A stretch of DNA of 64,000 nucleotides from positions 1 to 64,000 of the forward strand of contig OZ025677.1 in NCBI GenBank assembly GCA_964019335.1, read 5' to 3'. The position numbers and the translations under genes are program-made. Positions 3,128-39,484 of this stretch are shown here, piece after piece; the first letter of the stretch is position 1; every line of letters starts with the position of its first letter. Origin of the DNA: Diplonema japonicum (taxonomy: Eukaryota > Protista > Euglenozoa: Diplonemea). The notes under the pieces are model-generated. The model was not told the DNA's origin and ran no database searches. It saw nothing but the letters and a program-made list of their open reading frames with translations.

Positions 3128-3348
3128 TAAGAGTTGAAGGAGGCCGGTATTGGCGGCGCCCTGCACAAGTGCTGTCTACTTGATAACACGGTGCGCTCCT
3201 CGGCCGAGTTGTAGCTTCTTCTGCGTTCCGTGTCGTGTCCTTAATGCGTGCGGTGTGCAACTCAACCCCAGCCGGGGCCCCGTCCCGGGTAACCAAAATT
3301 CTGCGCTCGTGCTCTACCACTTCTTATATTTCCATGTTATCCCCACCT
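3128..3348 (-). mobile_element. Non-autonomous ribozyme-headed retroelement, copy 1 (ribozyme core deleted, A-type tail)
   Basis: Homologous to 3560-3881 but lacks ~100 nt including the P3/L3/P4 region. Confidence 0.85.
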
Positions 3349-3559
3349 TAAAAAAATAAAGAATAGAATGGGAGGGCGTTTTTTTTTTTTTTTTTTTTTT
3401 TGCCCTCTTTCTTTTGCAAAAAAAAAAAAAAAAAAAAGAGAACCAGAAAAGTGGAACAGATGAGGGGGGGGGGGGGGGAATTAAAAGAACGAAATTTACT
3501 ATCCAGTCAGAAATTTATATTAAAAAAAAACCCACACTAAAAAAAAAAAAAAAAAAAAA

Positions 3560-3881
3560 TATGAGTTAAAGGAGGCCGGTGTTGGCGGCGCCCTGCACAA
3601 GAACTGTCTACTTGATTACAGGGGGCGTACCGCGGCCGAGTTGTAGCTTCTTCTGCGTTCCGCGTCGTGTCCTTAATGCGTGCGGTGTGCAGCTCAACCC
3701 CAGCCGGGGCGTCCCGGGTAACCAAGATTCTGAGCTCGTGCAGTTTGCTGCCTGTTCGTCACCCTGAGCATCTGCTTTATGTTCTTCCACTCGGGCGCTA
3801 CCGGTGATGACCGACGAGGAGGTCAACAGCGAACAACACATCTGATGTTTTTCTTATATTTTCATGTTATCCCCACCACCT
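3560..3881 (-). mobile_element. Non-autonomous ribozyme-headed retroelement, copy 2 (A-type tail)
   Basis: Starts AGGTGGTG after a T-run; ends CCTTTAACTCATAT+T-run, the same terminus as the LINE at 33022. Confidence 0.9.
3747..3880 (-). ncRNA. HDV-like self-cleaving ribozyme (predicted)
   Basis: P1 GGUGGUG/CAUCACC; P2 GCUGUUG/CAGGCAGC; P3 ACC/GGU; L3 UCCUCGUC; P1.1 CC/GG; P4 CGCCC-GAG/CUC-A-GGGUG; J4/2 ACGAA containing the catalytic C. Confidence 0.85.
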
Positions 3882-3957
3882 GAAAAAAAAGGAAGAAAAA
3901 AAAAAAAAGATAACTGTTAATTTATGAAAAAAAAACTAGATTTTTCAAAGAAAAATG

Positions 3958-4125
3958 AAATTCACTATGATAGCAACGGCCCGCAATGAAAAGTTCTAAC
4001 CTAATTCTTATACCATTATTGTTCTTTGGTGCCTCCCTTCGGATTTAGCCTTGGTCTTGGTTGCGGTTTCCCCACAGCCCCCAGGATTGCACCCTTTAAC
4101 TTTCGAATTCTTTTTAGCACTGCCC
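3958..4125 (-). mobile_element. Probable 3' fragment of a further non-LTR family (D-type tail)
   Basis: Minus strand reads LKRIRKLKGAILGAVGKPQPRPRLNPKGGTKEQ*, a basic C-terminus like that of the LINE ORF2. It is followed by GCGGGCCGTTGCTATCATAGTGAA, shared with 45536-45578. Confidence 0.4.
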
Positions 4126-5693: not shown

Positions 5694-5989
5694 GACTACT
5701 TATTTACCAAATAAAAATCAGATTACCTGATTTTTACGAGGAATGTTATTTTTTCACGAGTAGATTAATTTCACGAGCGAAACGAGTGAAATTAAAAAAA
5801 AACGTGGAAAAAAAAAAAAAAAAACATCCCGAGTAAAAAAAACCTAGCTGATTTTTATTTAGTATGATATTTTATTTAATTTTTGCAAAGTTAAATGGGA
5901 AAAAATTCGGGAACACCAAGAAAGCTGATGCAAGACACGGCTCAATTTTCTCATTTGACTACATTTATAGGCAGAGCAATGCTGAGTTT

Positions 5990-7202: not shown

Positions 7203-7294
7203 CACATTCCTTTTTTTCATAGTATCCAGGGTTAACCGATCACCCGCGGGTTTTTAATTACAATCGGGTTTTAAATTGACGTCAAATGAAAGGC

Positions 7295-7985
7295 GAGCAT
7301 GCAACCATGCTTAAAACCCTTATATTCGTATCCCGGGCCCCCCAGATACACAAAGCCGGCCCCAGGGAGCATCAAAACGACTTAGAAAAGGATTATTTTC
7401 TCGAAAAGCTGTTTTTTCGCTTTTTTTGACGGGTTTTTAATTAAAAGCGAAAAAACAAAAAAAATCGAAAATCAAAAATTAAAACAGGAGGAGAGCATGC
7501 AATCATGCTTAAAACCCTTCGTTTCATCCCCCGGGCCCCCCAGATACACAAAGCCGACCCCAGGGAGCATCAAAATGACATAGAAAAGGATTATTTTCCC
7601 GAAAAGCTGGTGCTTCCCTGTTTCAGGCAGGATCCTAATTGGGAGCGAAATCAAAAGTCAATAATTAAAACGGGAGGAGAGCATGCAACCATGCATATAA
7701 CAACCCTTTTATTCGTCCCCCGGGCCCCCCAGATACACAAAGCCGACCCCAGGGAGCATCAAAACGACTTAGAAAAGGATTATTTTCCCGAAAAGCTGTT
7801 TTTTCGCTTTTTTTGGCGGTTTTTCTTCTTTTTTCTGTTTAAATAGGAGCGAAATCAAAAATCAATAATTAGAACGGGAGGAGAGCATGCAACCATACTT
7901 ATAACCCTTCTATTCGTCTCCCGGACCTCCCAGGTACACAACGCCTGCATCGAAACAACTTAGAAAAGGATTATTTTCCCGAAAA
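7295..7985. repeat. Four tandem ~190-200 bp subterminal repeats inside the hAT element
   Basis: GAGCATGCAA(C/T)CAT...TAGAAAAGGATTATTTTC units begin near 7295, 7493, 7679 and 7883. Confidence 0.85.
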
Positions 7986-8239
7986 TCGGCATTCTCCCTG
8001 TTTTTGGCGGGTTTTTAACTGGGCACGAAAGTCAATAATGAAAAACATTGAAACTTGAACGGGAAGTAGCAACGCACAAAGTAAGGGGGCGCCTTGAAAA
8101 GCTCCATGGGACACACGGAAGCGTGCCCGTTGAGGCAGGATGTTCACCCACAGAGAACTGAATGCACGCACACAGCGATGAACGCCCAATTTCTTACCTC
8201 CCTGCTTGCAACCCGGCGTGCCTGAGAACGTGGTGCCTG

Positions 8240-12509: not shown

Positions 12510-12835
12510 GGGGCTTTGATTGCAACACTAGGTGGCGTTAAGCGTGCAATGAAGCACGAACTACCTACTTGATTACAGGGGGCGCTCCTCGGCCGAGCAG
12601 TAGCTTCTTCTGCGTTCCGCGTCGTGTCCTTAATGCGTGCGGTGTGCTCAACCCTAGCCGGGGCGTCCCGGGTAACCAAGATTCTGTGCTCGTGCAGTCT
12701 GCTGCCTGTTCGTCACCCTGAGCATCTGCGTTACGTTCTTCCACTCGGGCGCTACCGGTGATGACCGACGAGGAGGTCAACAGCGAACAACACATCTGAT
12801 GTACTTCTTAAATTTTCATGATATCCCCACCACCT
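12510..12835 (-). mobile_element. Non-autonomous ribozyme-headed retroelement, copy 3 (C-type tail)
   Basis: Body homologous to copy 2; the 3' ~55 nt are different (..CACCTAGTGTTGCAATCAAAGCCCC) and are followed by T22. Confidence 0.9.
12701..12834 (-). ncRNA. HDV-like ribozyme (predicted, intact)
   Basis: All helices are as in copy 2; substitutions are confined to J1/2 and the P4 loop. Confidence 0.85.
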
Positions 12836-15008: not shown

Positions 15009-17351
15009 TTAAAAAAAAAAAAAAAAAAAAGATGCGCCGAAGAGGGAGCCACACACAAACACCTACGTCGGGTGTTCCCCATGAAAGAGATTTTACGATT
15101 AGGAGCTTACCCACCCTTCTATTCCACTAGTGACATGACGTAAAAATAAGGGAGGGACAAAAGAGAAACGAAAACCCGTTTTTATTACGTCCTCCCACGC
15201 TAACGTAAATTTTTGAGCTTCAGTAAAATACAAAATTTTAGAGCACTTCCTACTTATAGCTTGCATGGGTGCGCAAGCGGCTGCCTAGGATTACATACCA
15301 GGTGGTTTTTTTTCTTCTTCTTTTTTTTTTTTTTTTTTTTTTTCCAGGCAGCGAAATCGAGTAAGGCGTGCACACATATTTCTTTTTTCGATTTTCTTTC
15401 TTTTTTTTTTTTTTATTTTTTTTTTTTTTTATAAACGTTCCCTAGAAGGGGCAAGAATGGAAGAGACATGCTTCTTTTTTTTTCTTTTTTTTTTCTTTAA
15501 AGAACCGGTTGATGGTTGCTTGGCACAGCCGGGGGGTTAACCTGTAGGAAGGGATAAGCCCAACAATGCTACCACACTCTTTTTAGCACATAACAATTCA
15601 GTAGTCAAAATATTGTTTTTATTTTTTTTTCTTGTTCAACCAGACGGACAGGCGGTGGGGGTTTTTTTAAAGAAAAAAAAAAAGAAGCACTTCTCATTAT
15701 CCTTTTGTGGGGAAAATGTTTTCTTTTCTCTTTCAATAGAATAAAAAAAGGGGGGCTTTTTTTGTTTTAGCATGCTGGCGGGGGATAAATACTGCATGCT
15801 ACCACTACTCCTTCCTTGCTCTTACAAGAAACTGTGCAGTTCTTGTTAAAATTCAATAAGATTACTTATTTTATGTTGCCAATATAGAAATGTTTTACGC
15901 TCTGGGTCCGTAAGTGACCCACCAGAAATCGCAAAATGACGGGCTAGAAGGATTTGCGTCCGGACCCAAATGTGTGGTCCCTGGGCCCCCCTGAAAGAAA
16001 CCACTATGTAAATAGGCCGGGTTACTGAACGGGCCCGAAGCGCAAAAAAGAAAAAGAAAGAAAACAAAAAAATATAAATACTTAATATCTGAGTTAAAAA
16101 AAAAAAGAGGTCATTGTGATATGCCCTCCCCCCCCCCCCCCCCCCCCGCTCAGTTTTAAAAATAATTTAGAAAGAAACCCAGGGCTGACAGCACCCAAAA
16201 AAAAAAAAAATATTTTCCCCCCTTTTCTAATTCACTCTCAATTATAATTTTTTTTCTTTTCCAAGCCAGACTATTAAAGGAGGGTCTCGAATTCGAGTTC
16301 CCTCTCATTTTTTTTTTTATATTTTTTTTTAGAAAAAAAAGAAGGGAAGATATCTAGGAGGGCAGACTGTGACGAAACAAAAAAATAGGGGAGAGGGTGA
16401 GCTTTTTAGGGGGAATTGAAACATTTTCTTCAATTTTCTTCAAATTGTTTCGTTTTTTTCTTTTTTTTTCCCGTTTTTTTTCCCCCTTCTTTCTTATGTC
16501 GTTGGCAAGCAGTTTGCATAACCTTTTTTTTAAGGCTAACGCGTAAAAAGAAAAGGGGGGGGGGGGAAATCTAAAAAAAAAAAAAAAACCGCCCCATCGT
16601 TACGGGTTCATAAGTTGCGAGCTGAAAAAAAGTGCTGCTTGTTTCAAGTTGTGACGTATAAAAAAGACAACCTAGCCACAAATGCGTACATGCAGCCTAG
16701 CCATTCGGGAATAAAGAAGAAAAAAAAAAAAAAGTACAAATTCATGAAACAAAGTTTACTTTCTCTGAACGGCCGCTGCAGCCAATCCGCACAGTGGCCT
16801 CAGGTTTCAGATTGCCAAAAACGTCACAAGCAGTGCATCGATGTAAAAAATTTCATTTTTTTGAAAGCAGCTTTTTTGTCAGTAAATAAAAAGATGTATT
16901 TATGAAAAACATCAAAAGCGCGCATACGTACCTAAAATATGATGGATACTGGCCGAGATAAGTGCATGTATGGGGTATGCACTGTGCATTGGATTGGAGG
17001 GAAAGAAAGAAAAAAGAACAAAAGTTAAAAAAAAAAAAAAAAAAAGAAGAAGATGCTTGAAGTAAAACAAAAAGTTCATTGCGTCTCCTAAAAATGTGCT
17101 GGGAAAAAACACACACACACACACAAAAAAGAATCAGTAAATGGATGTCATTAACTATCAACAGCAAATCGGGCGCAATGACTTGAGGGGTGGCCAGGAA
17201 AGAAAAAAAACATTTTACTTCTTTTTTTTTTTTATTTCTTCTTTTCTCCCTTTTCCCTCCATTACCCTCCTTTTTTTGGGGGGGCTCGAGCAAAAAAAAG
17301 CAGCATATCATCATTTATTATCGAAAAGAAGGGGAAAAGAGAGAAAAAAAA

Positions 17352-18086
17352 GATGTCTTTGAAGGGAACCTGCAGTATGTGACAGGATCGCCTAACGACA
17401 ATCAACTCATCTAGTGTTTGATCCCTTCTGTCGTGGTAGTGCCTTAGGCCCGTCGTAGTATCTCATCAACAGCTTGGGCGTGAAACCGACTAGCGAGTTG
17501 TTGAGGATGCAATGCGTTCGCAGTTGCTCCTCTAGGATCGGGTGGGTTGCCTTCGGGGACGCGAAGACCGGACGAGTGGAGTATCCAATGATGGAATGGC
17601 TGTGGAGCCCCAGGGTACGCAGTGAGTGTACTGACTTCTTAGTTTCTGCTGGAATCAGGTGATTCCCAGTTCCTGTTCTGTGTGCCCTGTCCAGGACGTT
17701 GAGGATTCTTCCGATTTTCCTAGCCCAGCATGCCAGGTCTTCACCACCCATGTGGATTCTCTCCGTTGCTATGAAGTCGACAGCAAGCTCCGCCTTGGAC
17801 ACTTGCCCTCCATCCTTGCCCCATTTCAGGGCACTCAGCCATTTGAGGACAAACGGGATCAGCCCCGGGAAGTACTTCTTCCCCAGCCCGTGCTTGTGAT
17901 ACCAAATGAGGGGTTTCGGTTCTAATAGGTTTCCCGGTTGGAATGGTCTTTTCCAGAAGTGTAGATTGTCGTATCTGACCTGCTTCTCGGTGTGCAGGCT
18001 CTCGAGTTTCCCCGCAATTTCCGCAAACATCAGGTGTAGTTCCTTGACACTTGTCAGGCTTATGTCCATATCAGAGGTAATAATGC
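17352..18086 (-). mobile_element. 5'-truncated non-LTR retrotransposon, family B
   Basis: The ORF portion (KWLSALKW..VSKAELAVDF..VHSLRTLG..PVFASPK) is homologous to the ORF2 C-terminus of the LINE. The distinct 3' UTR ends GGCGATCCTG..CAGGTTCCCTTCAAAGACATC+T-run. Confidence 0.85.
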
Positions 18087-18089
18087 CGT

Positions 18090-18121: not shown

Positions 18122-18879
18122 GAGTTAAAGGAAGTCTTTGTGAGACGCCCCCTTGTTCTCATCTTCTACCTGCGCCTATCCCCTTTCAGCAGCGGTTTCT
18201 CCTCCTTTGGTGGTCTTGCCGGCCTTCTCCCCAGCCTGGCCGCTCTTTCTCTTCGTTCTCTTGCCCATTGTCCTTTCAACGCCTCTAGGTCATGCTTGGT
18301 CTTCGGTGATGCAAATATCGCCCTCCTGTTCCATCCGATCACCGCCTTTGTCCTCCCGATGGATCGTAGTGTGTGCACCCTTGTGCACGGCTCAGCTGGG
18401 AAGGCCCTCCTTCCTTTCACCTTCTTCAGCACCCTCCCTAGCTCCCATGTGTGCCAGATCTTCTTCATCAGTCCATGCAATCTCCTCGCTTTCTGCTGTA
18501 CTTCTGCGAGATCCCCCAGCTTCCCTCCAAGGGTCTTCCCGGTCACGTTCTCGAAATCCAGTGCCAGCTCCACCGTCGACACTGACGTGTTCCTGCTGCC
18601 TGCATACCAGCGCAGTTGCCGCATCCACCTCAGCACCTCCTTCGTGTACTCCCGTAGGACATCCCCTGCCGGTAGCTTGCCGAAGTCCTTGTCCGACGGT
18701 ACTGGGTGTTCTTGACCTTGTGTGATCTCCAGCCACTGGTGTGTGTGGTACACCTCCTGCCTCTTCGCCTGTAGGGCTGCGTCCCGCTCCCCCACCACCG
18801 CCAGCAGGTACCTCTGCGTTCCTTCGAGCCTTTCCCTGACATCCTTCCCTGCTCCCCTTGGCAGGATGCCATGCAGCTT
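18107..18879 (-). mobile_element. 5'-truncated non-LTR retrotransposon, family A
   Basis: Clearly homologous to 33022-33785. Flanked on both sides by CGT(A)n (18087-18106 and 18880-18899), a target-site duplication. Confidence 0.92.
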
Positions 18880-18881
18880 CG

Positions 18882-18912
<31 letters not shown>

Positions 18913-19384: not shown

Positions 19385-19450
19385 GAATAGCTGAGTACAA
19401 ACGAAGTCATTGTGAGCCGCCCCCTTGTTCTCATCTTCTACCTGCACCTA
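19385..19450 (-). mobile_element. Solo LINE-A 3' tail, diverged
   Basis: GTGAGCCGCCCCCTTGTTCTCATCTTCTACCTGCACCTA matches the LINE-A stop/3'UTR. Confidence 0.75.
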
Positions 19451-20672: not shown

Positions 20673-20722
20673 TATATATATATGAGTTAAAGGAAGTCTT
20701 TGTGAGACGCCCCCTTGTTCTC
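20673..20722 (-). mobile_element. Solo LINE-A 3' tail
   Basis: TATATGAGTTAAAGGAAGTCTTTGTGAGACGCCCCCTTGTTCTC is identical to 33023-33066 and lies between A-runs. Confidence 0.85.
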
Positions 20723-20966
20723 AAAAAAATTCTTTTTTTTTTTTAAACCCATAAAGAACGGGGCTTTCCCCCCTCCTTTTTTTTTTTTTTTGAAAGAAAG
20801 AATAGTACTGCAACAGTCTGGGATCGTGTGTAAAAATAATGTGTTCAAGAACTAGAACTGAAATAATAATTAAAATATCATGATTCTTTCTTTCTTTTTT
20901 TTTTTTTTTTTTTGGCTGAAACAGCCGTCTATGTGTGGGTGTAAAAAAACTAGTTTGGCGCTCCAT

Positions 20967-21062
20967 TTGTTTGTGCGCACGAGCGGAATTTTACCTAATA
21001 AAATAGCTCATTACGCTGCCATCAACTAGTTTTTAGTCTCGACAATAATATTGTTAAAACAG
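20967..21062. repeat. ~100-bp dispersed repeat, copy 2
   Basis: Near-identical to 3021-3120. Confidence 0.8.
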
Positions 21063-21224
21063 AAAAAAATAAAAGGGGGAGACAAAAAAAAAGTAAAGGG
21101 AGGGGCGGCAAGAAAAGATGAAATTTTAATACAGTCACAAACATCAAATTGTGTATTTTATCCACAAAAGAAAGAAAAGAAAAGAAAAGAGAAAAGAAAA
21201 GAAAAACTGGCGATTTGTTGTGCA

Positions 21225-22947: not shown

Positions 22948-23479
22948 CGTGTTGCAGTCCTTTTGTTGCTTATGTCCTTGAGCATGTATGTGTGCCTGTG
23001 TGTGTGTGTGTGTGTTTTTTTTTCTTTTTTTTTTTCTTTTTTTTTTGTAATACATCGTGAATAATATTTAAAAAAAAAAAAAAGAAGGAGAGAAGAAACA
23101 CTTTACAAACGCGCGTTTAACGGTGTGTCCACGAGATTAAAAAAAAGGGGGGTAAAAAAAAATAGATCAATCACATTTCAATGGCACAGGGTGAGTGGGA
23201 ACAGCAGGGAGCGGGGGGGGGGGGGGGGGGGTAGAAGGAAAAAACTTAGCAGCTAGACGCTTGGGGGAAAAAAAAAAAAGAAAAAAAAAAACAACGAGAA
23301 AGGCAAAGAAAAAGAAGAAGAAGAAAATGAAAAGAAAAAAGAAATAGAACAGTGTTAAGCGAGAAGGTAGAGAAAGGGAACCTGCTGTCGGAATAAAAAA
23401 AAGAAAAACTAATTGGAAAGACCTCCTGTTTTGCTTAAGAGGTGAATCAAGAAAAAAAAAGAAAAGAAAAAAAAAAAAA

Positions 23480-23807
23480 GAGACTATTTAAGGGTGCCTG
23501 CAGTATGTGGCAGGGCGCCCTGCACAAGTATCGTCTACTTGATTACAGGGGGCGCGCCTCGGCCTAGTTGTAGCTTCTTCTGCGTTCCGCGTCGTGTCCT
23601 TAATGCGTGCGGTGTACAGCTCAACCCCAGCCGGGGCGTCCCGGGTAACCAAGATTCTGCGCTCGTGTAGTTTGCTGCCTGTTCGTCACCCTGAGCATCT
23701 GCATTATGTTCTTCCACTCGGGCGCTACCGGTGATGACCGACGAGGGGTCAACAGCGAACAACACATCTGATGTTTTTCTTATATTTTCATGTTATCCCC
23801 ACCACCT
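23480..23807 (-). mobile_element. Non-autonomous ribozyme-headed retroelement, copy 4 (B-type tail, 13-bp TSD)
   Basis: AAAAAAAGAAAAG is duplicated at 23454-23466 and 23808-23820, with an extra A13 (sense-strand T tail) at 23467-23479. The tail resembles the family B 3' end; L3 has a 1-nt deletion. Confidence 0.9.
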
Positions 23808-24193: not shown

Positions 24194-24510
24194 CTCGATG
24201 ATTTAAAGGAAGCCGGTGGGGGCACCCTGCACAAGCACCATTTACTTGATTACAGGGGGCGCACCTCGGCCTAGCTGTAGCTTCTTCTGCGTTCCGCGTC
24301 GTGTCCTTAATGCGTGCGGTGTGCAGCTCAACCCCAGCCGGGGCGCCCCGGGTAACCAAGATTCTGAGCCCGTGTAGTTTGCTGCCTGTTCGCCACCCAG
24401 AGCATCTGCTTCTTCCACTTGGGCGCTACCGGTGATGACCGACGAGGAGGTCAACAGCGAACAACACATCTGATGTACTTCTTTATATTTCCATGTTATC
24501 CCCACCACCT
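24194..24510 (-). mobile_element. Non-autonomous ribozyme-headed retroelement, copy 5 (A-type tail)
   Basis: Homologous to copy 2. Confidence 0.9.
24381..24509 (-). ncRNA. HDV-like ribozyme (predicted, intact)
   Basis: Same core as copy 2; P4 is CGCCCA/UGGGUG (two changes that keep pairing) and J4/2 is the canonical GCGAA. Confidence 0.85.
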
Positions 24511-31665: not shown

Positions 31666-32133
31666 GTAAAAAAAGAAACCAAACACCAGCAACACAAAAG
31701 AGCGAGCTATCCTCTCAGAAAAACGAACACACAAATAGTCAATTCAAAATAAAATAAACCGTTTTTTCTTTCAGGCTGCTGTGGGCCGTTCTCTCCTCGG
31801 ACTATCTAGACGATAGCCAGGTATCTGTGGTTAAGCGAAAAATTGACTATTTTAAGAGGGAGGGAGAGGGGATACAGGACAGTAAAAGCAAAAACACCGT
31901 AGCAGGGGTTTTAAATGAGAGGCATGAACAAGGTGCTTGATACAAAAGAATGAAATGGGCCTTTCAAACTTATATGGAACACTCTTGTAGAAATGGATGA
32001 ATCTTTTAGTAGACCTTCTTTTTTTTTCTTTTTTTTTTTTCTTCTTTATTCTGTTTTGTTTGCGCACTTGCGGAGCTCTATAGCTGCGGCCCGGAGGAGG
32101 TTCGGGTTAATCTCTCAAAAGGAAAAAAAAAAA

Positions 32134-32176
32134 GATGTCTTTGAAGGGAACCTGCAGTATGTGACAGGATCGCCTA
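32134..32176 (-). mobile_element. Solo LINE-B 3' tail
   Basis: Identical to 17352-17394; lies between A-runs. Confidence 0.85.
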
Positions 32177-33071
32177 GAAAAAAAAAAAAGAAAAGAAATT
32201 GTAGAAAATAAACAGTTAAAAAATAATAATTCTGAACTTGAACTTGATCGCCCTCTTATTTCTTTTTTTATTTCCCCCTCCCCCCCGCTCAAAGGACTAC
32301 AAGTTCTAGATTGACATTTAATTTATTTATTTTTTTGAATTTCTTTTTCCTTTTTTTTGCTCAAATAAAGATAGAGAAATGCTGCTTGTTTACGTTCGTG
32401 CGAAAGAGGGGGGGGGGGGGGGGGAGAAGAACAAGAAGGGGGGGGGAAGAAAAGAGAGCAAAGCCATGGTCTAAGCCACGTATTTTAGGCTTCACTGTTA
32501 CTTCAGCACAAGCATCCAAGAAAAAGCGATACAAGTAGTGCTTTTTTTCAGAAGCACTTATGGGGGGGGGACCAGTGGGGTTCGTCAGGCGATGATATTG
32601 AGATATTAGTAAAAAATAGGAGAAAGAAAAGAAAAAAAAAAATGAAATGAAACCATCTAGTAGGGCCTAGGTGTCCTTTGTGGGCAATCTCCAGCAGAGC
32701 AGTGGAGAGTAATCATTTCTGGCCGGTTGGGGCATTCAAAAGAAGAAAAGAACGAAAGCACAACGAGTACAATATGCAATCATACTCTGTGTTTAAGAAT
32801 ACCGTGTTTTTGTTCTTCTTTTTTTTTTTGTCCCCCTCTTCTTCCATGTATGCCCATGAGGCATTGTGAAGGCCTTAGTTTCTTGCTTCTAAGGTATACG
32901 TTTCTTTCTTCAAAACAGCGCAGGGAATTGACTCGTTCCACTCGTGTTGCCGGGAACACCAGTGGTACGAATAAATTCTGTTAACTTCGGTGTGCGGTGC
33001 TCACCGTTATAGAAAAAAAAAATATATGAGTTAAAGGAAGTCTTTGTGAGACGCCCCCTTGTTCTCATGCT

Positions 33072-36000
33072 CTACCTGCACCTATCCCCCTTCAGCAGCG
33101 GTTTCTCCTTCTTCGGTGGTCGTGCCGGCCTCCTCCCCAGCTTGGCTACTTTTTCCCTTCTTTCCTTTGCCCATTGCTTCCCCAGCTCCTCCAGGTCGTA
33201 CTTGGTCTTCGTTGATGCAAAGATTGCTCTTCTACTCCACCCGATCGCCGCCTTCGTCCCTCCGATTGATCGCAGCGTATGTACTCTCTTGCATGGTTCA
33301 GCAGGGAAGGCCCTCCTTCCTTTCACCTTCTTCTGCAGTCTCCCTAGTTCCCATGTGTTCCACACCTTCTTCATCACCGTGTGCAGTCTCCTGGCCTTCT
33401 GTCGCACCTCTGCCAACTCCCCTAGCTTCCCTCCAAGGGATTTCTGGGTCACGTTTTCGAAATCCAGCGCCAGCTCCACCGTCGACACTGCCGTGCTTCT
33501 GTTCCCTCCATACCAGCGCAGCTGCTTGAGCCATTTCAGCACCGGTTTCGTGTACTCCTTCAGGGTGTTGCCGGTCTGCAGCCTCGCGAACTCCTCCTCT
33601 GTTGGTGCTGGGTGTGCCTCCCCCTCCGTGATCTCCAGCCATTGGTGTGTCCGGTAGATCTGCTGCCTCTTTGCCTGCAAGGCTGCGTCGCGTTCCCCCA
33701 CCACAGCCAGCAGGTAACGCTGGGTCTTCTCGAGCCTGTCCTTGTCCTCCTTGGCCGCTTCCCTCGGGAGGATGCCATGGAGCCTCATGCACGGTTCTAG
33801 GCCTGTTCGTGTCGTGCCTGCATGTGCCTCCCGTTGCCCTACTTCGACAGCCAGTTCGCACTCCCACAGTGCATGCTCCAGGATGTTGGATATCTGTTGC
33901 ATCTGACCGCATACGTCGCAGCGTGCCGTTGCGGGTTCGTCCTGCTGCCTCTGCTCCGCCAGCAGCATGCGCTCCAGCTCCGCGACTTCCCCTTCTCCTC
34001 CCGCCTCTCTTTCTTCTTCGTCTTCTGAGTCGTCTCGGGAATCTTCTTCGTCCACCTCATCCTCCGTCGGTGGGATGTGTGCCACTGCGTCCGTCCGCCA
34101 TCCCCGTGGGTGGATGTAGAAAACCGCGCCTGTGATCACCCTGCGTAGGTTCCTTGCTGCGATGGGGTCCGACGACGCCAGCTTCCCCCATAGCTCGTTT
34201 GTCTCGACAGCGGCTGCCGTCGCCATTCCTTTCATGGAGCTCCGTTTTCCCATGATGGCCTCCGCTTCACCACGCCTGAGCTTGTCTCTGATGTAGTGTC
34301 GGAACCGCTCCTTCTCCATGGCCATGGTGTCCTTCAGCTGGTCCCAGGTTGCTTGCACCATGGGTAGCCACCTCTGCTTCAGGTTTCCCACCAGGCCCAG
34401 CGCCTTCTTCCCTTCCCGGTACAGCTTTGCGATGTCGTTGCAGCGTGCCCACAGTTGGTCGTCCTTCCTGCATGCCCTGTACATGAGCATCAGTGCTTTG
34501 TAGGCTGCTGTCATCTTCGGGTGGTGTGTGTGCCCTGGTAGTGTCACGGAGAGTACTGCGCCGGGGCTCCGCGTGCGATACCTCTGGCCCCACAGCGTGT
34601 ATGTCGTCTCCATCACCAGGAGTTCCATCATCCCCGTCCTTGGCGGTGAGAAGGGGGCGTCGTACAGGCAGCTTGGCAGCAGTGTGGAGCTGATGATCCG
34701 CGCCTTCTGCTGGAAGGACAGCGGGGTCGCCCCCAGCCTGCTCAACGTCTTCATCGCTTCCTTGGCCCTGTCGTTGTTGTATTGCTGCTGGCCGTCCGTC
34801 CGCAGCTTGGCTCCCAGCACCTCCACTGTCCGCACTGCCTGCAGCACTTCACCGTCCACCTTCACTTCCGGTGCCTTGGCGCCTGTCGTAAAGGTTTTGG
34901 TTTTCTTTACGTTTAGCTTCATGCCAACCATTTTGCAGAAGTCCTCCACCGCCTCCACCCCCTTCTGCAGTGCTGCCGCGAGTTGTGACAGAAGGTACGC
35001 GTCGTCAGCGTATGACAGCGAGCGGACCCCCGTGCCGTCCTCCACCTGTTTCATCAGCACTGCCAGTAACGCGTTGATGAGTACCACAGATATGGGGCAC
35101 CCTTGTAGGATTCCATTTGTCGTGTGGAACTCCTCTCCAACGCCCGTGGCGTACCTGAAACGTCTCCGCATGCCCGCGTACATCCCCTTCAGCGCCCTTA
35201 GAATGCCCGTCTCCATGCCCATGTCCTCCACCAGCTCCATCACTAGTTGCTGCGGTACGCTGTCGAAACACTTCGCAAAGTCAAGTGCCACCCCGACCAG
35301 CGGTTTCCCTTCGAGTAGAGATTCCTCGATGTCCAGGGCGAGGTCCATTAGCGCGTCCTCTGTCCCGAAGCCTGTGCGGAATCCGTACTGCTTGTCGTGT
35401 ACCCACTTCTCCTGCCAGAGAAGGATGTCTGCCAGTCGCGTGCATGCCCAAAGTCTGTACACCGCTGATGTCACCGTGATGGGTCTGTGCTCCAGCGGTC
35501 CCGCGTCGTCGCATTTTGGTACGAGTGTGACCAGCGCCGTCTTCACGGCCTCTGGCCATCTCCCGGTTGCTTCGATCGCTTGGAAGAGCTGAGCCCAGGC
35601 GTCCAACACCGACTCTGGTAGTTTGCGTAGCTCCAGCATCCTCCACCCGTCGATGCCTGCTGCGCTTCTCTTGCTCTTCCTTGCGAGTACCTCTCTCAGC
35701 CTCGCTCCCGTGAGCTGCGTCTTCGTCATCTCATGCCGTTGTATAAACTTGCCATACTTTGCCTTGAAGGGGGCGAAGGGGGGTTCCGGCTTGTTTTCGT
35801 ACTTCGAGAAGACGCTCTTCCAGGCTTTGCGCATGACTGCGTCGATCTTCGCAGGGTCTGCCACTAGTAACTTACCATCCTTGACTGCCCTGGTCCCATC
35901 GCTCTGGCGTTTTCCTCTTGCTACTGTCACCAGCTTGGCCGTTTCTCTTCCCGATGCCACCTCAGCCAGGTATTCCCGTCTTCGCGTCGTGTTCGACTCG

Positions 36001-37423
36001 GTCCTCTTCCTCCGTTCTTGCGCTGCCACGGCGTCCTCCATGTCTAGGGTTGCTGCCAGCATGTCTTCGATGAACGAGGTGTCCTGCGGTATTGGCTCCG
36101 TCGGGACTGCTGCTGCTGCTGCTTCTCTGTTCACATTCCTTATTGTGTTCAGAGTGGTCGTGCTCAGGCTCCCCTCGTCCATTGCCCGTTCCAGTTGCTC
36201 TCGTAATGAACGGGTCTTGAGCCTCAGCTTCTCCAGTCGGGCCTGCATGATTGTAGCCGCCCCGATCGAGCCTGTTGTTGTCGGTGCACACACATTCTTG
36301 TTCTTCGTGCTTATGTGTTTGCCCCTTCCAACGTATGCTGCCCTCCCTGGAGTCCCTACCGGTAGTCCTATCAGGAGATCTTCTGTGCATCGGGAGAGTG
36401 TTTCGAAGGCTTCTGTGATTCGGCCCTCTCGCAAGTGCAGCTGGAAATGACACGCTTCAACAGCCTCTGCGCCCTGACCTTCTGCCGGCTCCTCTGCTGC
36501 TTCCAGCCCCTTCGGCAGCATGTACCTCTGTACCTGCAGACTGAACCTATCGAGTTGTAGTCGGACTGTGAGGGTTCTGTGGTCGGTTCCTTTGACTAGC
36601 TTGTATGCGCTGCAGTCCGTGATGGCCGGCACCGCCTCTGGGTTTGCCAGAATCCTGTCTATCCGTGTGGCGCAGTTTTCCCGTACAAACGTTGGTTCTG
36701 GTTGCTCGCCCCTTCTCATCTTTGCGCATAGCTCCGCTGCATCAGTCCAGCCCGTCTGCAGCGCCTTGCACAGTTCTGGAGACCTGTCCTCGTCAGTGTT
36801 CAGGTCGCCGACAACGAGTATGGGTACGTTGCCGAGCTCCCTCGTCTTCTTCTGCAGGACGTAGTGGAGGAGGGTCTCCCTCTTTGCCGTTTCTTCTCGC
36901 CCTGCTCCCGACGGGCAGTAAACCGAGATGATGTGCAGCCATTTGCGCTTGCCGTCGATCGCGACCTGCGTGTGCAGCCACCTCCGGCTTTGCTCCTCAG
37001 GTTGGTCTGAGGTATCCAGTGTTCCTGGTAGTGCGGTCCTGGGTTCTCGGATGAGTGTTGCGAGTCCCCCCCTCTGTGCTACCCAGTTCGATGCGATGCC
37101 CTCGACCTTCCTCCCCGGCTGCGGTGGCCCCCACATCGGCTTCCACTTCTTCTTCTGCTTCACCTTGCCAAGCTCTCGTTCTATTTCTTGTTGGCCTGCC
37201 AGGGTGAGCGCTGTCTCCTGTGTACATATGACGTCCATGTCCAGCTTTGTGACCTCCTCAAGTTGGTTGCGAAGGGAGGCTACGTTCACCGTCGATATGT
37301 TCATGTACGTGGGTGCTGGTCCAGGGTTTGGTTGTATTCCCTGAACCGTGAGTCTCGCGAAGTCCTCCGCCTCCTCTGACCCCGGTCTGCGCTTCCCCTG
37401 CCTCAGTTCAGCACCTTTCCGAT
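33072..37423 (-). CDS. ORF2: 2A-like peptide, AP endonuclease, reverse transcriptase, Cys/His zinc motif and C-terminal domain (start uncertain)
   Basis: TVNVASL, DVICTQET, VYCP, VGDLN, TRIDRI and TDH (APE); LDFAKCFDSV, GILQGCPIS and YADD (RT); CDVC..EHALWEC; no RNase H seen. Confidence 0.95.
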
Positions 37424-39181
37424 GCATGCGCAGCACTGTTCCCTCCTGCATGTTTCCAGGGTGCACACCGCTGCCTTCCCTCCCTTCAGCAGCGTCTTGC
37501 ATGAGGCGCACTGCCCCTGGGTGGCCTTGTACGCCTTCGACCACGCATGGGTGTGCATCTTTTGCTTCTTCTGTGCCTGCGATTGGGGGGAATCCATGCC
37601 CTTCCCTTCCGAGGACTTCGTCGGCTGCCTGTAGGATGGCGTGCCGTCCGTCTCCATCGGTGTCGGGGACCGGGATTCTGGAGGTGTCACGCTCCTTGGC
37701 CGTTTCGTGGGGGACGCGGCTGTGTTCTTCTTCGGCGATCCCTGTGCCTTCCTCCTCCTCGGTGATGGTGAAGCCTCCGGAGGTGTCCCGCTTCTCTGCC
37801 TCTTCGTCGGGGATGCTGGAGATGCTGGGTTCGTTGCGATTACCTTCTCCCTCAGCTCCCTGTGCCTCAGCGCTTGCTTCTTCAGTGTCTCCCTCAGCTT
37901 CTTGTTGTCCTCTTGCAGCCCTTTGATGATCTGCTCCAGCTTCTGCATCTGTTGTTGTATTCCTGTCGGCATCTGCTCTTCCTTTTGCTCTTCCTTTCCC
38001 TTCTCCTTCTGCGGTTTGTGCTTCTGTTCCTTCTGCCCCTTCTGCTGTGCCTTCGGGTCCTTCTTCTGTTGTGCCTTTGGGTCCTGCTTTTGTTGTGCCT
38101 TCGGGTCCTGCTTCTGCTGTGCCTTCGGGTCCGCCGCTGCCCAGTACTCCTCGCCTTTGTCCTTGCCATAGAAGCAGAGGAACTCCGGCTTGGAGTACTT
38201 GGTGTCGTTGTTCTCGTTTGGGTCCTTCCGCGTCTCCCCTTTTGCCACCACCATCCGCAGCGGTTGGAGTTTCCATGCCTCTGTCAAGGGCATTTGGTTC
38301 TCTCCTACTTGGACTTCCCCGAACGGGGGTCGGACAACCGCCTGGATAATGGCGAGCTGTTTCCCTTTCTTGGGGATCATCCGGAGCACCTCCGCACCTT
38401 CCCACCCCTTCGTGCGGATCACCTCCTGCACCTGCCCTGCTGTTACTCCGCGCGGTACGCAGTGGAGGTCGTACTTCGTCTTCTTTGCTCCCCCTGCTTC
38501 CACCAGTAGCCCTGCCTCCCGTGCCCTGTCTGCCGCGTGCGTCCTTGCTTCCCCTTCCTCCATCACCAGCCCGACCCCCCTCCCGTTGCTGATGATGGCT
38601 GCCTCGGGCCCCGCCGCCTTCCGTGCCTCCGACACGCTCCACGTCTTTAGCCACAACGGTGGCGCGTCCTCCTTCCTCCTCCTTCGTTCTTCGATGTACA
38701 TACCGGTACCTTCTGCACCCCCGGCCTGTTTCGCTTTCTTCGCGTCGCTCGCCGACAGATAGACCAGGAGGTCCATCTTGGTGAGCTTGCCGTCCCACCC
38801 CTCGCCCCTCGGGTCTGACAGCCCTCGGGTCCCGATCCCCATGGATCCGAGCACCTTCTTCGTGTGCTCTCTCGCGTCGGCCTCGACCTGCTCCCAGCCT
38901 TCCCCCGCCGCCGGTCGCCTCCATACCACTCTCAGCACCTCGGTGGCGTTCTCGTCTTCGTCCTCGTCCTCGTCCTCGTCCATCCAGCGTTCCTGCTGCT
39001 GCTTGCCATGTGTCTTCGGCCATCCCGCCTCTGCCGTTACCCTCACCGCGCGTACCACCTTCCCCTTCCCTGGTCTCGCCCGCGCTACCTGCACCCACGA
39101 AGGTGCTGCCCCCTGCTGGGGTTTTTGCTCTCCTCCTGAGGGAGAAGACCCAGGGCCACCACTTGGAGGTTCCCCAGCCAT
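37403..39181 (-). CDS. ORF1 (gag-like; DPKAQQKQ repeats, coiled coil, Ser/Pro-rich linker, C-terminal Cys/His zinc-binding domain)
   Basis: 592-aa ORF starting 45 nt from the element end; HxH..CASC..C..C..CCAC terminus. Confidence 0.85.
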   Translation of the reverse strand: MAGEPPSGGPGSSPSGGEQKPQQGAAPSWVQVARARPGKGKVVRAVRVTAEAGWPKTHGKQQQERWMDEDEDEDEDENATEVLRVVWRRPAAGEGWEQVEADAREHTKKVLGSMGIGTRGLSDPRGEGWDGKLTKMDLLVYLSASDAKKAKQAGGAEGTGMYIEERRRRKEDAPPLWLKTWSVSEARKAAGPEAAIISNGRGVGLVMEEGEARTHAADRAREAGLLVEAGGAKKTKYDLHCVPRGVTAGQVQEVIRTKGWEGAEVLRMIPKKGKQLAIIQAVVRPPFGEVQVGENQMPLTEAWKLQPLRMVVAKGETRKDPNENNDTKYSKPEFLCFYGKDKGEEYWAAADPKAQQKQDPKAQQKQDPKAQQKKDPKAQQKGQKEQKHKPQKEKGKEEQKEEQMPTGIQQQMQKLEQIIKGLQEDNKKLRETLKKQALRHRELREKVIATNPASPASPTKRQRSGTPPEASPSPRRRKAQGSPKKNTAASPTKRPRSVTPPESRSPTPMETDGTPSYRQPTKSSEGKGMDSPQSQAQKKQKMHTHAWSKAYKATQGQCASCKTLLKGGKAAVCTLETCRREQCCACIGKVLN

Positions 39182-39224
39182 GATTGATAGAGATTTTGTT
39201 AATTCCAACCCAATATCCAGCCCC
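39115..39224 (-). ncRNA. HDV-like ribozyme at the LINE 5' end, overlapping the ORF1 start
   Basis: P1 GGGGCU/GGCCCU; P2 GCUGGGG/CCCCAGC; P3 ACC/GGU; L3 UCCAAGU; P1.1 CC/GG; P4 UCUUCUCC/GGAGGAGA; J4/2 GCAAA. Confidence 0.8.
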
Positions 39225-39362
39225 TTGAAAAAAAAAGAAGAAAAAATAAATAAATAAAAATAAAGAATCTTTTGAGTACCGAATAACAAAAAAAAAAAAA
39301 AAAAGAACAAATAATTTCTTTAAAAAAAAAGAACGGGCTAAAAGAAAAAAAAAAAAAAAAAA

Positions 39363-39402
39363 GAGACATTTAAGGGTACCTGCGGTATGTGGCAGGACGC
39401 CT
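39363..39402 (-). mobile_element. Solo B-type 3' tail, variant
   Basis: AGGCGTCCTGCCACATACCGCAGGTACCCTTAAATGTCTC followed by a T-run. Confidence 0.75.
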
Positions 39403-39484
39403 GAGAAAAAATCAAAATCAAAATTCTCTCTCTTTTTTTTTCTTCTTAATTCGTTCAGAAGCTTCTTAGCCTTAACTTAGCGTG

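What the first reader, a model, noticed from the sequence alone, without database searches (positions are those of the whole stretch)
3128..39403. Ribozyme-headed, poly(T)-tailed LINE and short-element system with interchangeable tails
Seen: one autonomous LINE, two to three truncated LINE fragments, five ~220-330 bp non-autonomous elements and at least seven solo tails. All lie on the gene-coding strand and all are embedded in sense-strand T-runs. The LINE and the short elements each start exactly at G1 of an HDV-like fold, but the two ribozymes differ in sequence. Known: HDV-like ribozymes process the 5' ends of R2 and trypanosomatid L1Tc/ingi/SIDER elements. Inference: these promoterless elements excise their RNA from polycistronic host transcripts and share RT machinery through a common 3' hairpin. 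I know no description of this combination (ribozyme inside ORF1, 2A-like motif, T-tail, tail swapping).
Basis: partly seen in the sequence, partly recalled or inferred. Interest (0 to 1): 0.9.

Follow-up and report, generated by a model that had tools for sequence, protein, structure and literature searches.

The report
Ribozyme-headed T-tract retrotransposons in a diplonemid
This stretch of a marine protist (diplonemid) genome holds a young jumping-gene community: one intact LINE, broken LINEs and an abundant short parasite of them, which begin at a predicted HDV-like self-cleaving RNA, carry a run of T where other LINEs carry poly(A), land in T-tracts and always point the same way as the host genes; it is a new variant of the trypanosome L1Tc/NARTc theme.

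Summary
The observation largely holds. I mapped 14 retroelement insertions between 3021 and 39401, all on the minus (gene) strand. They are an intact 6.2-kb APE+RT LINE (33024-39224), 3' fragments of two other LINE families, five 217-345-bp short elements, two ~110-bp elements and four solo or relic tails.

The LINE and the four intact short elements each carry a complete HDV-like double-pseudoknot fold. The two versions differ in sequence but keep the helices through compensatory changes. In 49 of 53 genomic copies, however, the element boundary lies one conserved A upstream of G1. Rfam recognises neither fold, and cleavage is untested.

Elements lack poly(A). Their 3' end is a conserved hairpin module, then (AT)n and a variable T-tail, flanked by T-rich 8-13-bp target duplications. 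This fits target-primed reverse transcription from an A-run onto a U-run.

Co-orientation with host genes is 14/14 here and 17/17 at other loci, although sense T-runs and A-runs are equally common.

New here: the ORF2 frame stays open across all of ORF1, upstream of a conserved 2A-like motif.

The closest known systems are L1Tc/NARTc/SIDER and R2/SIDE. I class it as a new variant of a known kind. The scan had already found this system elsewhere in this genome (s1-866996, s1-867015).

The parts
33024..39224 (-). LINE-A, full length (6.2 kb), intact ORF1 and ORF2. The 10-bp target duplication T9C flanks it: upstream at 39227-39236, downstream after the T-run near 33013-33022.
   Evidence: Pfam APE+RT. 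The first 326 nt are 100% identical to 4 other genomic copies and the last 300 nt to 9. Flanks read.
39115..39224 (-). Predicted HDV-like ribozyme of LINE-A, with G1 at 39224. P1 GGGGCU/GGCCCU; 40-nt J1/2; P2 GCUGGGG/CCCCAGC; P3 ACC/GGU; L3 UCCAAGU; P1.1 GG; P4 CUUCUCC/GGAGGAG; J4/2 AGCAAAAA. The ORF1 AUG (39181) lies at the J1/2-P2 border.
   Evidence: Descriptor hit, segmentation, 29 genomic copies. No Rfam match.
37403..39181 (-). ORF1 (592 aa, no Pfam family, Cys-rich C-terminus). It is completely overlapped by the open ORF2 reading frame.
   Evidence: The ORF2 frame has 0 stops where about 7 are expected (P about 6e-4).
37317..37343 (-). 2A-like motif QGIQPNPGP in the ORF2 frame. It lies 60 nt after the ORF1 stop and just before the APE domain.
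   Evidence: The motif is conserved as GD(V/I)xxNPGP in diplonemid relatives.
33072..37316 (-). ORF2: APE (about 36579-37289), RT (about 34809-35495), CCHC finger (33858-33920) and a C-terminal domain of about 300 aa with no known family.
   Evidence: Pfam. The nearest solved structure is human L1 ORF2p, E 2.5e-24. Sequence relatives are diplonemid or unnamed environmental proteins.
33024..33066 (-). LINE-A 3' module: hairpin (AAGGGGG-C-GUCU[CACAA]AGAC-UUCCUUU), then AACUCAU(AU)n, followed by T10.
   Evidence: Fold z = -2.2. Across 20 genomic 3' ends, (AT) runs 2-6 and the T-run 0-22.
3563..3880 (-). Short element (SINE-like), reference copy, tail type 1. The predicted ribozyme spans 3747-3880, with G1 at 3880.
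   Evidence: (1566 first-look candidates, 97-98% identity).
24200..24509 (-). Short element, diverged copy (90%), tail type 1 variant. G1 is at 24509, 27 nt after the stop codon of the upstream gene. It has a compensatory change in P4.
23462..23806 (-). Short element with tail type 2 (LINE-C-like hairpin). A T13 tail is followed by a 13-bp target duplication, CTTTTCTTTTTTT.
12510..12834 (-). Short element with tail type 3 (ends ...UGCAAUCAAAGCCCC).
   Evidence: Four independent genomic copies carry this tail.
3131..3347 (-). Short element with an internal deletion of about 110 nt that removes the ribozyme core. The deletion junction is unique in the genome.
18122..18883 (-). 5'-truncated LINE-B (99% to a full-length LINE-B elsewhere; 80% to LINE-A).
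17336..18089 (-). 5'-truncated LINE-C. Full-length LINE-C copies elsewhere start with the spliced leader, not with a ribozyme. Tail type 2b.
39345..39401 (-). Solo tail, type 2, directly upstream of LINE-A.
   Evidence: z = -3.75.
32123..32176 (-). Solo tail, type 2b (LINE-C). It starts at the base of the hairpin (AGGCG), as do three other independent genomic solo tails.
20680..20723 (-). Solo tail, type 1 (LINE-A/B).
19399..19450 (-). Decayed LINE-A/B 3' relic.
20967..21075 (-). Short ~110-bp element (E110) with its own hairpin, CA-rich loop and T-run end. A second copy lies at 3021-3133 (-).

Best explanation
The region holds a young, probably still active community of APE-type non-LTR retrotransposons of a diplonemid. 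Earlier notes name the species Diplonema japonicum.

The members:
- LINE-A is autonomous.
- LINE-B and LINE-C are present as 5'-truncated copies.
- A ~320-bp non-autonomous element, with roughly 1500 candidate copies in the genome, parasitises them.

Proposed cycle:
1. Copies sit in sense orientation inside host transcription units and are co-transcribed. This step is inferred.
2. An HDV-like ribozyme at the very 5' end of LINE-A/B and of the short element cuts the RNA free just upstream of G1. The fold is shown. Cleavage is inferred.
3. The RNA ends in a conserved hairpin module followed by AU repeats and a U-run copied from the T-tract downstream of the source copy. The DNA shows this. The RNA 3' end itself is inferred.
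4. The endonuclease nicks the A-rich strand at the edge of a T-tract. The A-run 3'-OH anneals to the U-run and primes reverse transcription. This is a mirror image of L1, where a T-run anneals to poly(A). The result is a variable (AT)n plus T tail and T-rich 8-13-bp target duplications that often end in C. The junctions are shown. The enzymology is inferred.
5. At the 5' junction a few extra bases are added, nearly always an A next to G1.

Other features:
- Different LINE families have related hairpin modules. The short element has acquired at least three of them, probably by RT template switching at the shared GGCG box.
- ORF2 is read in a frame that stays open across all of ORF1. It carries a 2A-like NPGP motif just before the endonuclease, which would release the enzyme from an overprinted leader. 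This is inferred.
For: Element identities and map.

Youth and abundance:
- LINE-A copies are 100% identical at both ends.
- First-look candidate counts are 441 (LINE-A 3'), 554 (LINE-C 3') and 1566 (short element).

Ribozyme:
- The descriptor hits exactly at the heads of 5 of 5 intact elements, against 3.6 chance cores per 128 kb.
- Three sequence versions (LINE-A, LINE-B, short element) keep all helices. Both-sided changes occur in P1 (2 pairs), P2 (2 pairs) and P4. UCC in L3, GG of P1.1 and the C-purine J4/2 are invariant.
- A P1 U-to-C change keeps its pair in L025.
- Flanks diverge 1-7 nt upstream of G1 in 53 copies. The variable extra bases are not inherited. R2 behaves the same way when cleavage is at the element end (PMC3774820).
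- The only ribozyme-less short element is a single-copy deletion.

The 3' end and the target.

Tail modules.

Orientation:
- 14/14 in the window and 17/17 at other loci.
- Sense T-runs and A-runs are equally common: 98 against 83 in the window and 239 against 221 at the other loci.

Overprinted ORF2 frame. Transcript-derived proteins P0001 and P0002 show the same layout.

2A conservation.

Expression: RNA-like contigs (spliced, SL-bearing) cover the region, and the short-element parts are very deep.
Against: - No Rfam HDV-family hit, even at E<=10.
- No experimental or read-level evidence of cleavage. The only runs on hand are contigs, and some contigs run across G1 of the copy at 23806.
- The boundary is at A(-1), not G1, in 92% of copies. 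Truncated copies lack this A. The A may therefore be templated, which would put the RNA 5' end one base upstream of the predicted cut.
- The descriptor is loose enough to give a few chance hits per window.
- Covariation rests on three ribozyme versions only.
- J1/2 is long (40-45 nt) and its closing helix is not significant against shuffles.
- The 2A-like motif lacks the usual D and E residues.
- LINE-C uses the spliced leader as its head instead of a ribozyme, so a ribozyme is not needed for this life style.
- T-rich target duplications are hard to delimit in low-complexity DNA.
Confidence: 0.62

Rival explanations
1. The 5' ends are set by an internal promoter, not by a ribozyme. Transcription would start at the conserved A(-1) within an initiator-like T-C-A-G context, as with Pr77 of L1Tc or the internal promoters of insect LINEs. 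On this view the HDV-like fold is either a second, redundant device (as in L1Tc, where promoter and ribozyme coincide) or serves translation.
For: - A(-1) is present in 49 of 53 full-length copies and is absent from 5'-truncated junctions, as expected if it is templated.
- The context is often T-run, C, A, G.
- The L1Tc precedent for a dual promoter/ribozyme is PMC3383444.
Against: - In the copies with clear target duplications, the C at -2 belongs to the duplication, so it is not part of a carried initiator.
- An internal promoter would not explain the strict sense orientation of dead copies.
- It would not explain the conservation of a full double-pseudoknot fold across three diverged versions.
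- A run-off addition of one A on the priming strand explains the A equally well (run-off additions are described for R2 in PMC3774820).
Confidence: 0.15
2. The elements are self-contained transcription units whose RNA ends by T-tract-dependent termination (Pol III, or snRNA/SL-RNA-type Pol II). They would not be passengers cut out of host polycistronic transcripts. The hairpin plus T-run would then be a terminator that leaves the U-tail used for priming.
For: - Every element ends in a hairpin plus T-run.
- Elements contain no internal T-run longer than 5, and LINE-A is only 12.5% T.
Against: - T-run depletion inside LINE-A is no more than its base composition predicts: 1 observed against 1.4 expected.
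- The T-run length after the element ranges from 0 to 22, and part of it is target duplication.
- No promoter is evident, and no tRNA, 7SL or 5S head was found (Rfam).
- A ribozyme at the 5' end would be superfluous for a unit that starts its own transcript.
Confidence: 0.2
3. The HDV-like folds are chance or decayed look-alikes without catalytic activity. Element 5' ends would simply be the ends of the master copies.
For: No Rfam match. The descriptor gives about 3.6 chance cores per 128 kb. The boundary is offset by 1 nt.
Against: - Two unrelated-looking sequences, in two element classes, both place a full fold within 1 nt of the boundary. The chance of this is roughly (3e-5 per position)^2.
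- The helices are kept through compensatory changes, and the catalytic-core letters are invariant.
- The ORF1 N-terminus is constrained to encode the fold in both LINE-A and LINE-B.
Confidence: 0.07
4. The strict co-orientation with host genes reflects purifying selection against antisense insertions, not a strand-specific integration mechanism.
For: - Leishmania SIDERs are about 4-fold enriched in sense orientation within gene clusters, which is usually read as selection or function (PMC2689281).
- One inverted short-element pair and one antisense E110 piece exist.
Against: - The bias is 31/31 for copies that are 97-100% identical to each other, so they are very young.
- Target T-runs are equally available on both strands.
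Confidence: 0.3

Closest known systems
Trypanosomatid L1Tc/NARTc, ingi/RIME and SIDER (Pr77/L1TcRz; PMC3185411, PMC4035085, PMC3383444)
   Same: - Euglenozoan host with polycistronic transcription and trans-splicing.
- An HDV-like ribozyme forms the first nucleotides of both the autonomous LINE and its short non-autonomous derivatives.
- A 2A peptide sits immediately N-terminal to the APE domain (PMC3708506).
- Sense orientation predominates within gene clusters (SIDER, PMC2689281).
   Different: - No poly(A) tail; there is a T-tail and T-tract targeting instead.
- Two ORFs, with ORF1 starting inside the ribozyme and overlapped by the ORF2 frame. L1Tc has a single ORF.
- Pfam finds no RNase H domain.
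- The ribozyme has a 40-45-nt J1/2, and the LINE and its parasite carry different ribozyme sequences rather than one shared 77-nt hallmark.
- The 3' hairpin modules are swappable.
- Homology of the RT to the ingi clade could not be tested here.
R2 and its SIDE parasites (PMC3774820, PMC3414825)
   Same: - Co-transcription with a host transcript and release by a 5' HDV-like ribozyme.
- Variable, non-inherited extra nucleotides at 5' junctions when the cut is at the element end.
- Non-autonomous elements consist of a ribozyme head plus the LINE's 3' end.
- The RT recognises a structured 3' UTR and there is no poly(A).
   Different: R2 has a restriction-like endonuclease and a single site in 28S rDNA. 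The elements here have an APE endonuclease and thousands of T-tract sites in Pol II units.
Mammalian L1/Alu target-primed reverse transcription
   Same: - ORF1+ORF2 (APE-RT-CCHC) architecture. L1 ORF2p is the nearest solved structure.
- A homopolymer tail anneals to a complementary homopolymer at the nick.
- Frequent 5' truncation.
- A parasitic short element outnumbers the LINE.
   Different: - Mirror-image chemistry: a U/T tail with an A-run primer, against poly(A) with a T-run primer.
- The tail is probably copied from flanking DNA rather than added by poly(A) polymerase.
- A structured 3' module is present.
- There is a ribozyme head in place of a 5'-UTR promoter.
'Stringent' LINE/SINE pairs that share a 3' stem-loop (e.g. 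eel UnaL2/UnaSINE1; from my own knowledge, not checked here)
   Same: The short element carries the partner LINE's 3' hairpin, with short repeats after it that vary by RT slippage.
   Different: Here one body is combined with at least three different modules, and the modules also occur alone as discrete solo tails that start at the hairpin base.
RTE-associated drz-Agam-2 HDV-like ribozymes with a J1/2 peripheral domain (PMC4908430)
   Same: A large insertion in J1/2 that can close into a helix (P1.2). The ribozyme sits at a LINE 5' end.
   Different: The sequences are unrelated. The J1/2 here contains the ORF1 start codon.

Membership tests
HDV-like self-cleaving ribozyme | Nested double pseudoknot in the order P1-P2-P3-L3-P3'-P1'-P1.1-P4-J4/2-P2', with the cleavage site 5' of the first P1 nucleotide (a G). 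| tested here: met
   My own descriptor and the segmentation match LINE-A, LINE-B and four short-element copies. Chance rate is 3.6 cores per 128 kb.
HDV-like self-cleaving ribozyme | Core letters: CC in L3 pairing with GG after P1' (P1.1), and a catalytic C followed by purines in J4/2. | tested here: met
   L3 is UCC..., P1.1 is GG, and J4/2 is AGC-AAAAA, AGC-AAACU or (GA)C-GAACA.
HDV-like self-cleaving ribozyme | Helices supported by covariation. | tested here: inconclusive
   Both-sided changes occur in P1, P2 and P4 between the LINE and short-element versions, and in P4 between LINE-A and LINE-B. Only three versions are available, and MAFFT alignments were not good enough for the formal pair counter.
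HDV-like self-cleaving ribozyme | Match to curated covariance models (Rfam HDV clan). | tested here: not met
   No HDV-family hit at gathering score or at E<=10. The long J1/2 and the pseudoknots, which such models cannot represent, may explain this.
HDV-like self-cleaving ribozyme | Self-scission that gives a 5'-OH at +1. | not testable with these tools
   Only assembled contigs were available.
L1Tc/ingi clade with Pr77 hallmark | A shared 77-nt Pr77 signature at the 5' end of LINEs and of their derivatives. | not tested
Here the LINE and the short element have different heads of 110 and 134 nt.
L1Tc/ingi clade with Pr77 hallmark | Single ORF with 2A-APE-RT-RNase H-zinc finger, and a poly(A) tail. 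| tested here: not met
   2A-like motif, APE, RT and CCHC are present. There is a separate ORF1, no RNase H by Pfam and no poly(A).
L1Tc/ingi clade with Pr77 hallmark | RT groups with the ingi clade in a non-LTR phylogeny. | not testable with these tools
   All close relatives are diplonemid or unnamed environmental proteins. No reference clade sequences could be fetched.
APE-type non-LTR retrotransposon (LINE) | APE endonuclease plus RT in one ORF, 5'-truncated copies, target-site duplications. | tested here: met
Classical SINE | Pol III head derived from tRNA, 7SL or 5S. | tested here: not met
   No Rfam family matches in the short element. It is better described as a SIDE/NARTc-like non-autonomous element.
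2A ribosome-skipping peptide | C-terminal D(V/I)ExNPGP. | tested here: inconclusive
   LINE-A has GIQPNPGP and LINE-B has GIHPNPGP, both lacking the D and E. Relatives have canonical GDIETNPGP or GDVHPNPGP at the same place.

The most novel reading that the evidence does not exclude
These elements are a mirror-image L1. A U-tailed, ribozyme-released RNA integrates by strand-specific target-primed reverse transcription at T-tracts. The integration step itself reads the direction of host transcription or replication, which would explain the 31/31 co-orientation despite equal numbers of T- and A-runs. This guarantees that every new copy is again co-transcribed, so no promoter is needed. In addition, ORF2 would be translated as an overprinted polyprotein across ORF1 and released by a 2A-type skip.
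Probability: 0.3. Interest if true: 0.8.

Novelty: new variant of a known kind. Interest (0 to 1): 0.64.

Why it matters
- **Wider reach of the strategy.** Diplonemids are among the most abundant marine eukaryotes, and their mobile elements are essentially undescribed. The D. papillatum genome paper defers their analysis (PMC10161547). If confirmed, the ribozyme-plus-co-transcription strategy of L1Tc and R2 extends to a second euglenozoan lineage.
- **A new priming solution.** The elements would use a U-run on an A-run for priming, which I found in no paper.
- **A tractable case of orientation control.** There are about 1500 near-identical young copies, all in sense orientation.
- **Natural material for ribozyme work.** The LINE ribozyme also has to encode the start of a protein.
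- **A possible overprinted ORF1/ORF2 arrangement** coupled to a 2A-like motif.

Tried and rejected
- **Rfam.** The gathering-score scan of the whole window and E<=10 scans of both heads gave no ribozyme family.
- **Alignment-based covariation.** MAFFT misaligned the LINE and short-element ribozymes (A2, A4) and the tail types (A3), and RNAalifold found no pairs. I therefore did the segmentation by script and did not use the formal pair counter or build a covariance model.
- **RNA ends.** The look-up of sequencing runs returned only Logan contigs. Read laying shows RNA-like contigs but cannot show starts or ends.
- **RT clade.** The 150 best representatives carry no names, and the listing of cluster members gave none.
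- **LINE-C.** I walked to its 5' end hoping for a third ribozyme. It starts with the spliced leader instead.
- **Fragment at 17336-18089.** I first took it for a discrete 755-bp element. Other copies continue upstream, so it is a truncated LINE-C.
- **Descriptor hit at 16036.** It is not the start of a repeat.
- **Ribozyme-less short-element subfamily.** None exists; the deletion junction is unique.
- **T-run depletion inside LINE-A as a sign of Pol III.** It is no more than base composition predicts.
- **T-run strand asymmetry as the cause of the orientation bias.** Rejected.

Full report
**Setting**

Nearly all long ORFs of the window lie on the minus strand. They are separated by intergenic DNA that is full of homopolymer runs. 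Earlier notes of this scan identify the genome (G000, 62.5 Mb, 132 contigs) as a diplonemid, probably Diplonema japonicum. Three of my own results fit that:
- The closest relatives of the LINE protein are Diplonema papillatum and diplonemid transcriptome proteins.
- The diplonemid-type spliced leader heads some elements.
- RNA-like contigs of public runs cover the genes, with one 55-nt intron spliced out.

**Element map**

I ran a self-comparison and then a BLAST of an element library against both strands. Together they give 14 insertions between 3021 and 39401. All are on the minus strand, and there are none between 40 and 64 kb.

The insertions are:
- LINE-A, full length, at 33024-39224.
- A LINE-B 3' fragment at 18122-18883.
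- A LINE-C 3' fragment at 17336-18089.
- Five short elements at 3131-3347, 3563-3880, 12510-12834, 23462-23806 and 24200-24509.
- Two ~110-bp elements at 3021-3133 and 20967-21075.
- Three solo tails at 39345-39401, 32123-32176 and 20680-20723.
- One decayed tail at 19399-19450.

The LINE-A ORF2 carries the APE endonuclease (E 1.4e-9) and the reverse transcriptase (E 4e-26). It also has a CCHC finger and a C-terminal domain of about 300 aa with no known family. ORF1 (592 aa) matches no family. The nearest solved structure is human L1 ORF2p (E 2.5e-24), ahead of R2.

The families are young and numerous:
- LINE-A has at least 10 full-length heads at 95-100% identity, and about 441 first-look candidates for its 3' end, many of them 100% identical.
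- LINE-C gives 554 candidates.
- The short element gives 1566 candidates at 97-98% identity.

**The ribozyme claim**

Read on the minus strand, LINE-A from 39224 folds as follows:
- P1 GGGGCU/GGCCCU, with a G1-U wobble as in HDV.
- A 40-nt J1/2.
- P2 GCUGGGG/CCCCAGC.
- P3 ACC/GGU, with L3 UCCAAGU.
- P1.1 GG.
- P4 CUUCUCC/GGAGGAG.
- J4/2 AGCAAAAA.

The short element folds the same way with other letters:
- P1 GGUGGUG/CAUCACC.
- P2 GCUGUU/GGCAGC.
- A longer P4.
- J4/2 containing CGAA.

LINE-B differs from LINE-A mainly by compensated changes in P4.

I wrote a descriptor that requires all of these elements. It hits G1 of the LINE and of the four intact short elements. It also gives three other cores in the window that look like chance. 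Block-wise dinucleotide shuffles give 3.6 cores per 128 kb. The descriptor alone is therefore not proof. What is far beyond chance is that two different sequences each place a full fold within one base of an independently defined repeat boundary.

The ORF1 AUG (39181) is the first AUG after G1 and sits at the J1/2-P2 border. The first ~22 codons therefore also encode P2, P3, P1', P4 and P2'.

Evidence against:
- Rfam reports no HDV-family match, even at E<=10.
- Covariation rests on three versions.
- I could not get a usable MAFFT alignment for the formal pair counter.

**The boundary**

I read 29 LINE-A/B heads and 24 short-element heads with their flanks. The flanks become unrelated 1-7 nt upstream of G1.

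The junction reads: T-run, often a C, then one to seven A, then G1. The base at -1 is A in 49 of 53 copies. In the copies with recognisable target duplications, the C belongs to the duplication and the A does not. Junctions of 5'-truncated copies lack the A.

Two readings fit:
- **Run-off addition.** Extra bases are added when the polymerase reaches the RNA end and are removed again by the ribozyme in the next cycle. This is exactly what is described for Drosophila R2 (PMC3774820).
- **A templated A.** This would put the RNA start one base upstream of the predicted cut. It favours an initiator-type start.

I cannot decide between them without RNA-end data. 'Starts exactly at G1' is therefore off by one base as a statement about the DNA.

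Two LINE copies (L006, L022) have the spliced leader fused at G2/G3. This shows that the T-tract plus AG at the head can also serve as a trans-splice acceptor.

The one short element without a ribozyme core (3131-3347) is a unique deletion, not a propagating subfamily.

**The 3' end and the target**

Twenty LINE-A 3' ends all finish with ...CUUUAACUCAU followed by (AU)2-6. A T-run of 0-22 follows. Short elements behave the same way.

Where the T-tract is interrupted, target duplications can be seen:
- CTTTTCTTTTTTT (13 bp) around the copy at 23462-23806, with a pure T13 tail between the element and the duplication.
- T9C around LINE-A.
- T9C and T7C around two other short-element copies, with T-rich tails of 11 and 2 nt.

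So there is a real T-tail of variable length, and the target is a T-tract. The priming strand ends in an A-run. That A-run can only anneal to a U-run in the RNA.

I infer that this U-run comes from read-through into the T-tract downstream of the source copy. One tail contains C's, which argues against untemplated uridylation. The variable (AT)n looks like slippage at initiation. This is L1 chemistry with the letters exchanged, and I found no paper that describes it.

**Tail modules**

The ends of LINE-A/B, of LINE-C, of the solo tails and of two short-element subfamilies fold into one architecture. It consists of a lower stem AGGG/YCCU, a bulged C, an upper stem that differs in sequence but stays paired (GUCU/AGAC, GCCG/CGGC, CCUGC/GCAGG, CCUGU/GCAGG) and a CA-rich loop. 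A U/A-rich box and the U-run follow (z-scores from +0.5 to -3.8, four of the five below -2).

A third short-element tail and the ~110-bp element have different hairpins.

In the DNA I fetched, the short-element body occurs with tail 1 (27 copies), tail 2 (3) and tail 3 (4), each in independent places. The swap point lies at the shared GGCG box, which fits RT template switching.

Four independent LINE-C solo tails begin at the same base, the foot of the hairpin. They look like a discrete product rather than random truncations.

**Orientation**

All 14 insertions in the window point with the genes.

I then fetched 10 kb around each of 20 other short-element copies. At 17 of these loci all long non-element ORFs lie on one strand, and the element is on that strand in all 17.

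Sense-strand T-runs and A-runs of 10 or more are about equally common. The counts are 98 against 83 in the window and 239 against 221 at those loci. Target availability therefore does not explain the bias.

The cause is either a strand-specific integration step or fast selection. Leishmania SIDERs show a weaker, 4-fold sense bias (PMC2689281).

**Coding oddity**

The ORF2 reading frame has no stop from G1 through the whole of ORF1. The third frame has 20 stops. Codon-order and synonymous shuffles of ORF1 predict about 7 stops in the ORF2 frame. P(0) is 6e-4 and below 2e-4 respectively.

LINE-B shows the same layout. So do transcript-derived proteins of 1916-1929 aa.

The 2A-like motif QGIQPNPGP (37317-37343) lies 60 nt after the ORF1 stop, directly before the endonuclease. 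Relatives carry canonical GDIETNPGP or GDVHPNPGP at that place. L1Tc and ingi do too (PMC3708506).

I propose that ORF2 is translated from an upstream start as an overprinted polyprotein and is released at the NPGP. This is inference only.

**Comparison and novelty**

The system works like L1Tc/NARTc and like R2/SIDE. It has a ribozyme head, co-transcription, a structured 3' end and a parasite built from head plus tail.

It fails the membership tests for the L1Tc/ingi family where I could test them: it has two ORFs, no RNase H by Pfam, no poly(A) and no shared hallmark. Its RT clade could not be placed.

The papers on hand contain no description of diplonemid retroelements beyond gene-model counts (PMC10161547).

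Within this scan the same system was already reported from other parts of this genome (s1-866996, s1-867015). Parts of it were also noted on this window (s1-865609, s1-865620, s1-865739, s1-865740). I re-tested those claims here.

**Limits**

- The sequencing runs are contigs only.
- Nothing here shows cleavage.

Noticed in passing
window 33072-39224 (-); L065 (LINE-B): The ORF2 frame is open from G1 across all of ORF1 (0 stops against about 7 expected), in both LINE-A and LINE-B. This suggests an overprinted leader that ends at the 2A-like motif.
   Followed up: partly
L082:2044-2140 (+), L083 (rc) 2186-2280: Full-length LINE-C starts with the 38-nt spliced-leader sequence followed by GTATCG..., preceded by a T-run. 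It has its own ORF1 and an ORF2 that begins with a 26-aa leader ending in GDVHPNPGP. It has no ribozyme.
   Followed up: partly
L006 and L022 (G000:C27:396587-396937; C30:603969-604319): One LINE-A copy and one LINE-B copy have the spliced leader joined at G2/G3 of the ribozyme head. Trans-spliced element RNA has therefore also been reverse-transcribed. The junction has one G fewer than an AG|G acceptor predicts.
   Followed up: no
window 13950-14520 (-): Frameshifted remnant of a piggyBac-type transposase (DDE_Tnp_1_7, E 8.6e-5 and 1.9e-3), between the short element at 12510-12834 and the next gene.
   Followed up: partly
window 3021-3133 and 20967-21075 (-): A ~110-bp dispersed element with its own hairpin, CA-rich loop and T-run end. 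It has the deepest contig depth of the stretch laid. Its 5' end and partner LINE are unknown.
   Followed up: no
window 7291-8044: Four tandem copies of a repeat of about 195 bp, at about 78% identity.
   Followed up: no
whole window: Homopolymer runs are extraordinarily dense in intergenic DNA: 98 T-runs and 83 A-runs of 10 nt or more on the gene strand in 64 kb.
   Followed up: partly
window 40987-44100 (-): Long 15-nt-period tandem arrays encode Pro/Thr/Ala/Glu-rich repeats in two adjacent genes (39590-41371, 42220-45378). They look mucin-like.
   Followed up: no
window 49724-52501 and 54260-57037 (-): Two ORFs of the same length (925 aa) lie 1.8 kb apart. They may be tandem paralogues.
   Followed up: no
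window 16036 (-) and 16080-16118 (-): A descriptor-positive HDV-like core that is not the start of any repeat, directly downstream of a decayed tail-1-like relic. It is probably chance or an old dead element.
   Followed up: partly
window 1772-1829 (+): A tail-like hairpin (GGGUCA-CAA-UGACCC, then UUAGUCUC and a T-run) on the plus strand. If real, it is the only antisense piece seen. Not verified.
   Followed up: no
L123 (G000:C40:454162-454819): Two short elements lie head to head (one at 90% identity, inverted). This is one of the two exceptions to co-orientation among the fetched loci.
   Followed up: no
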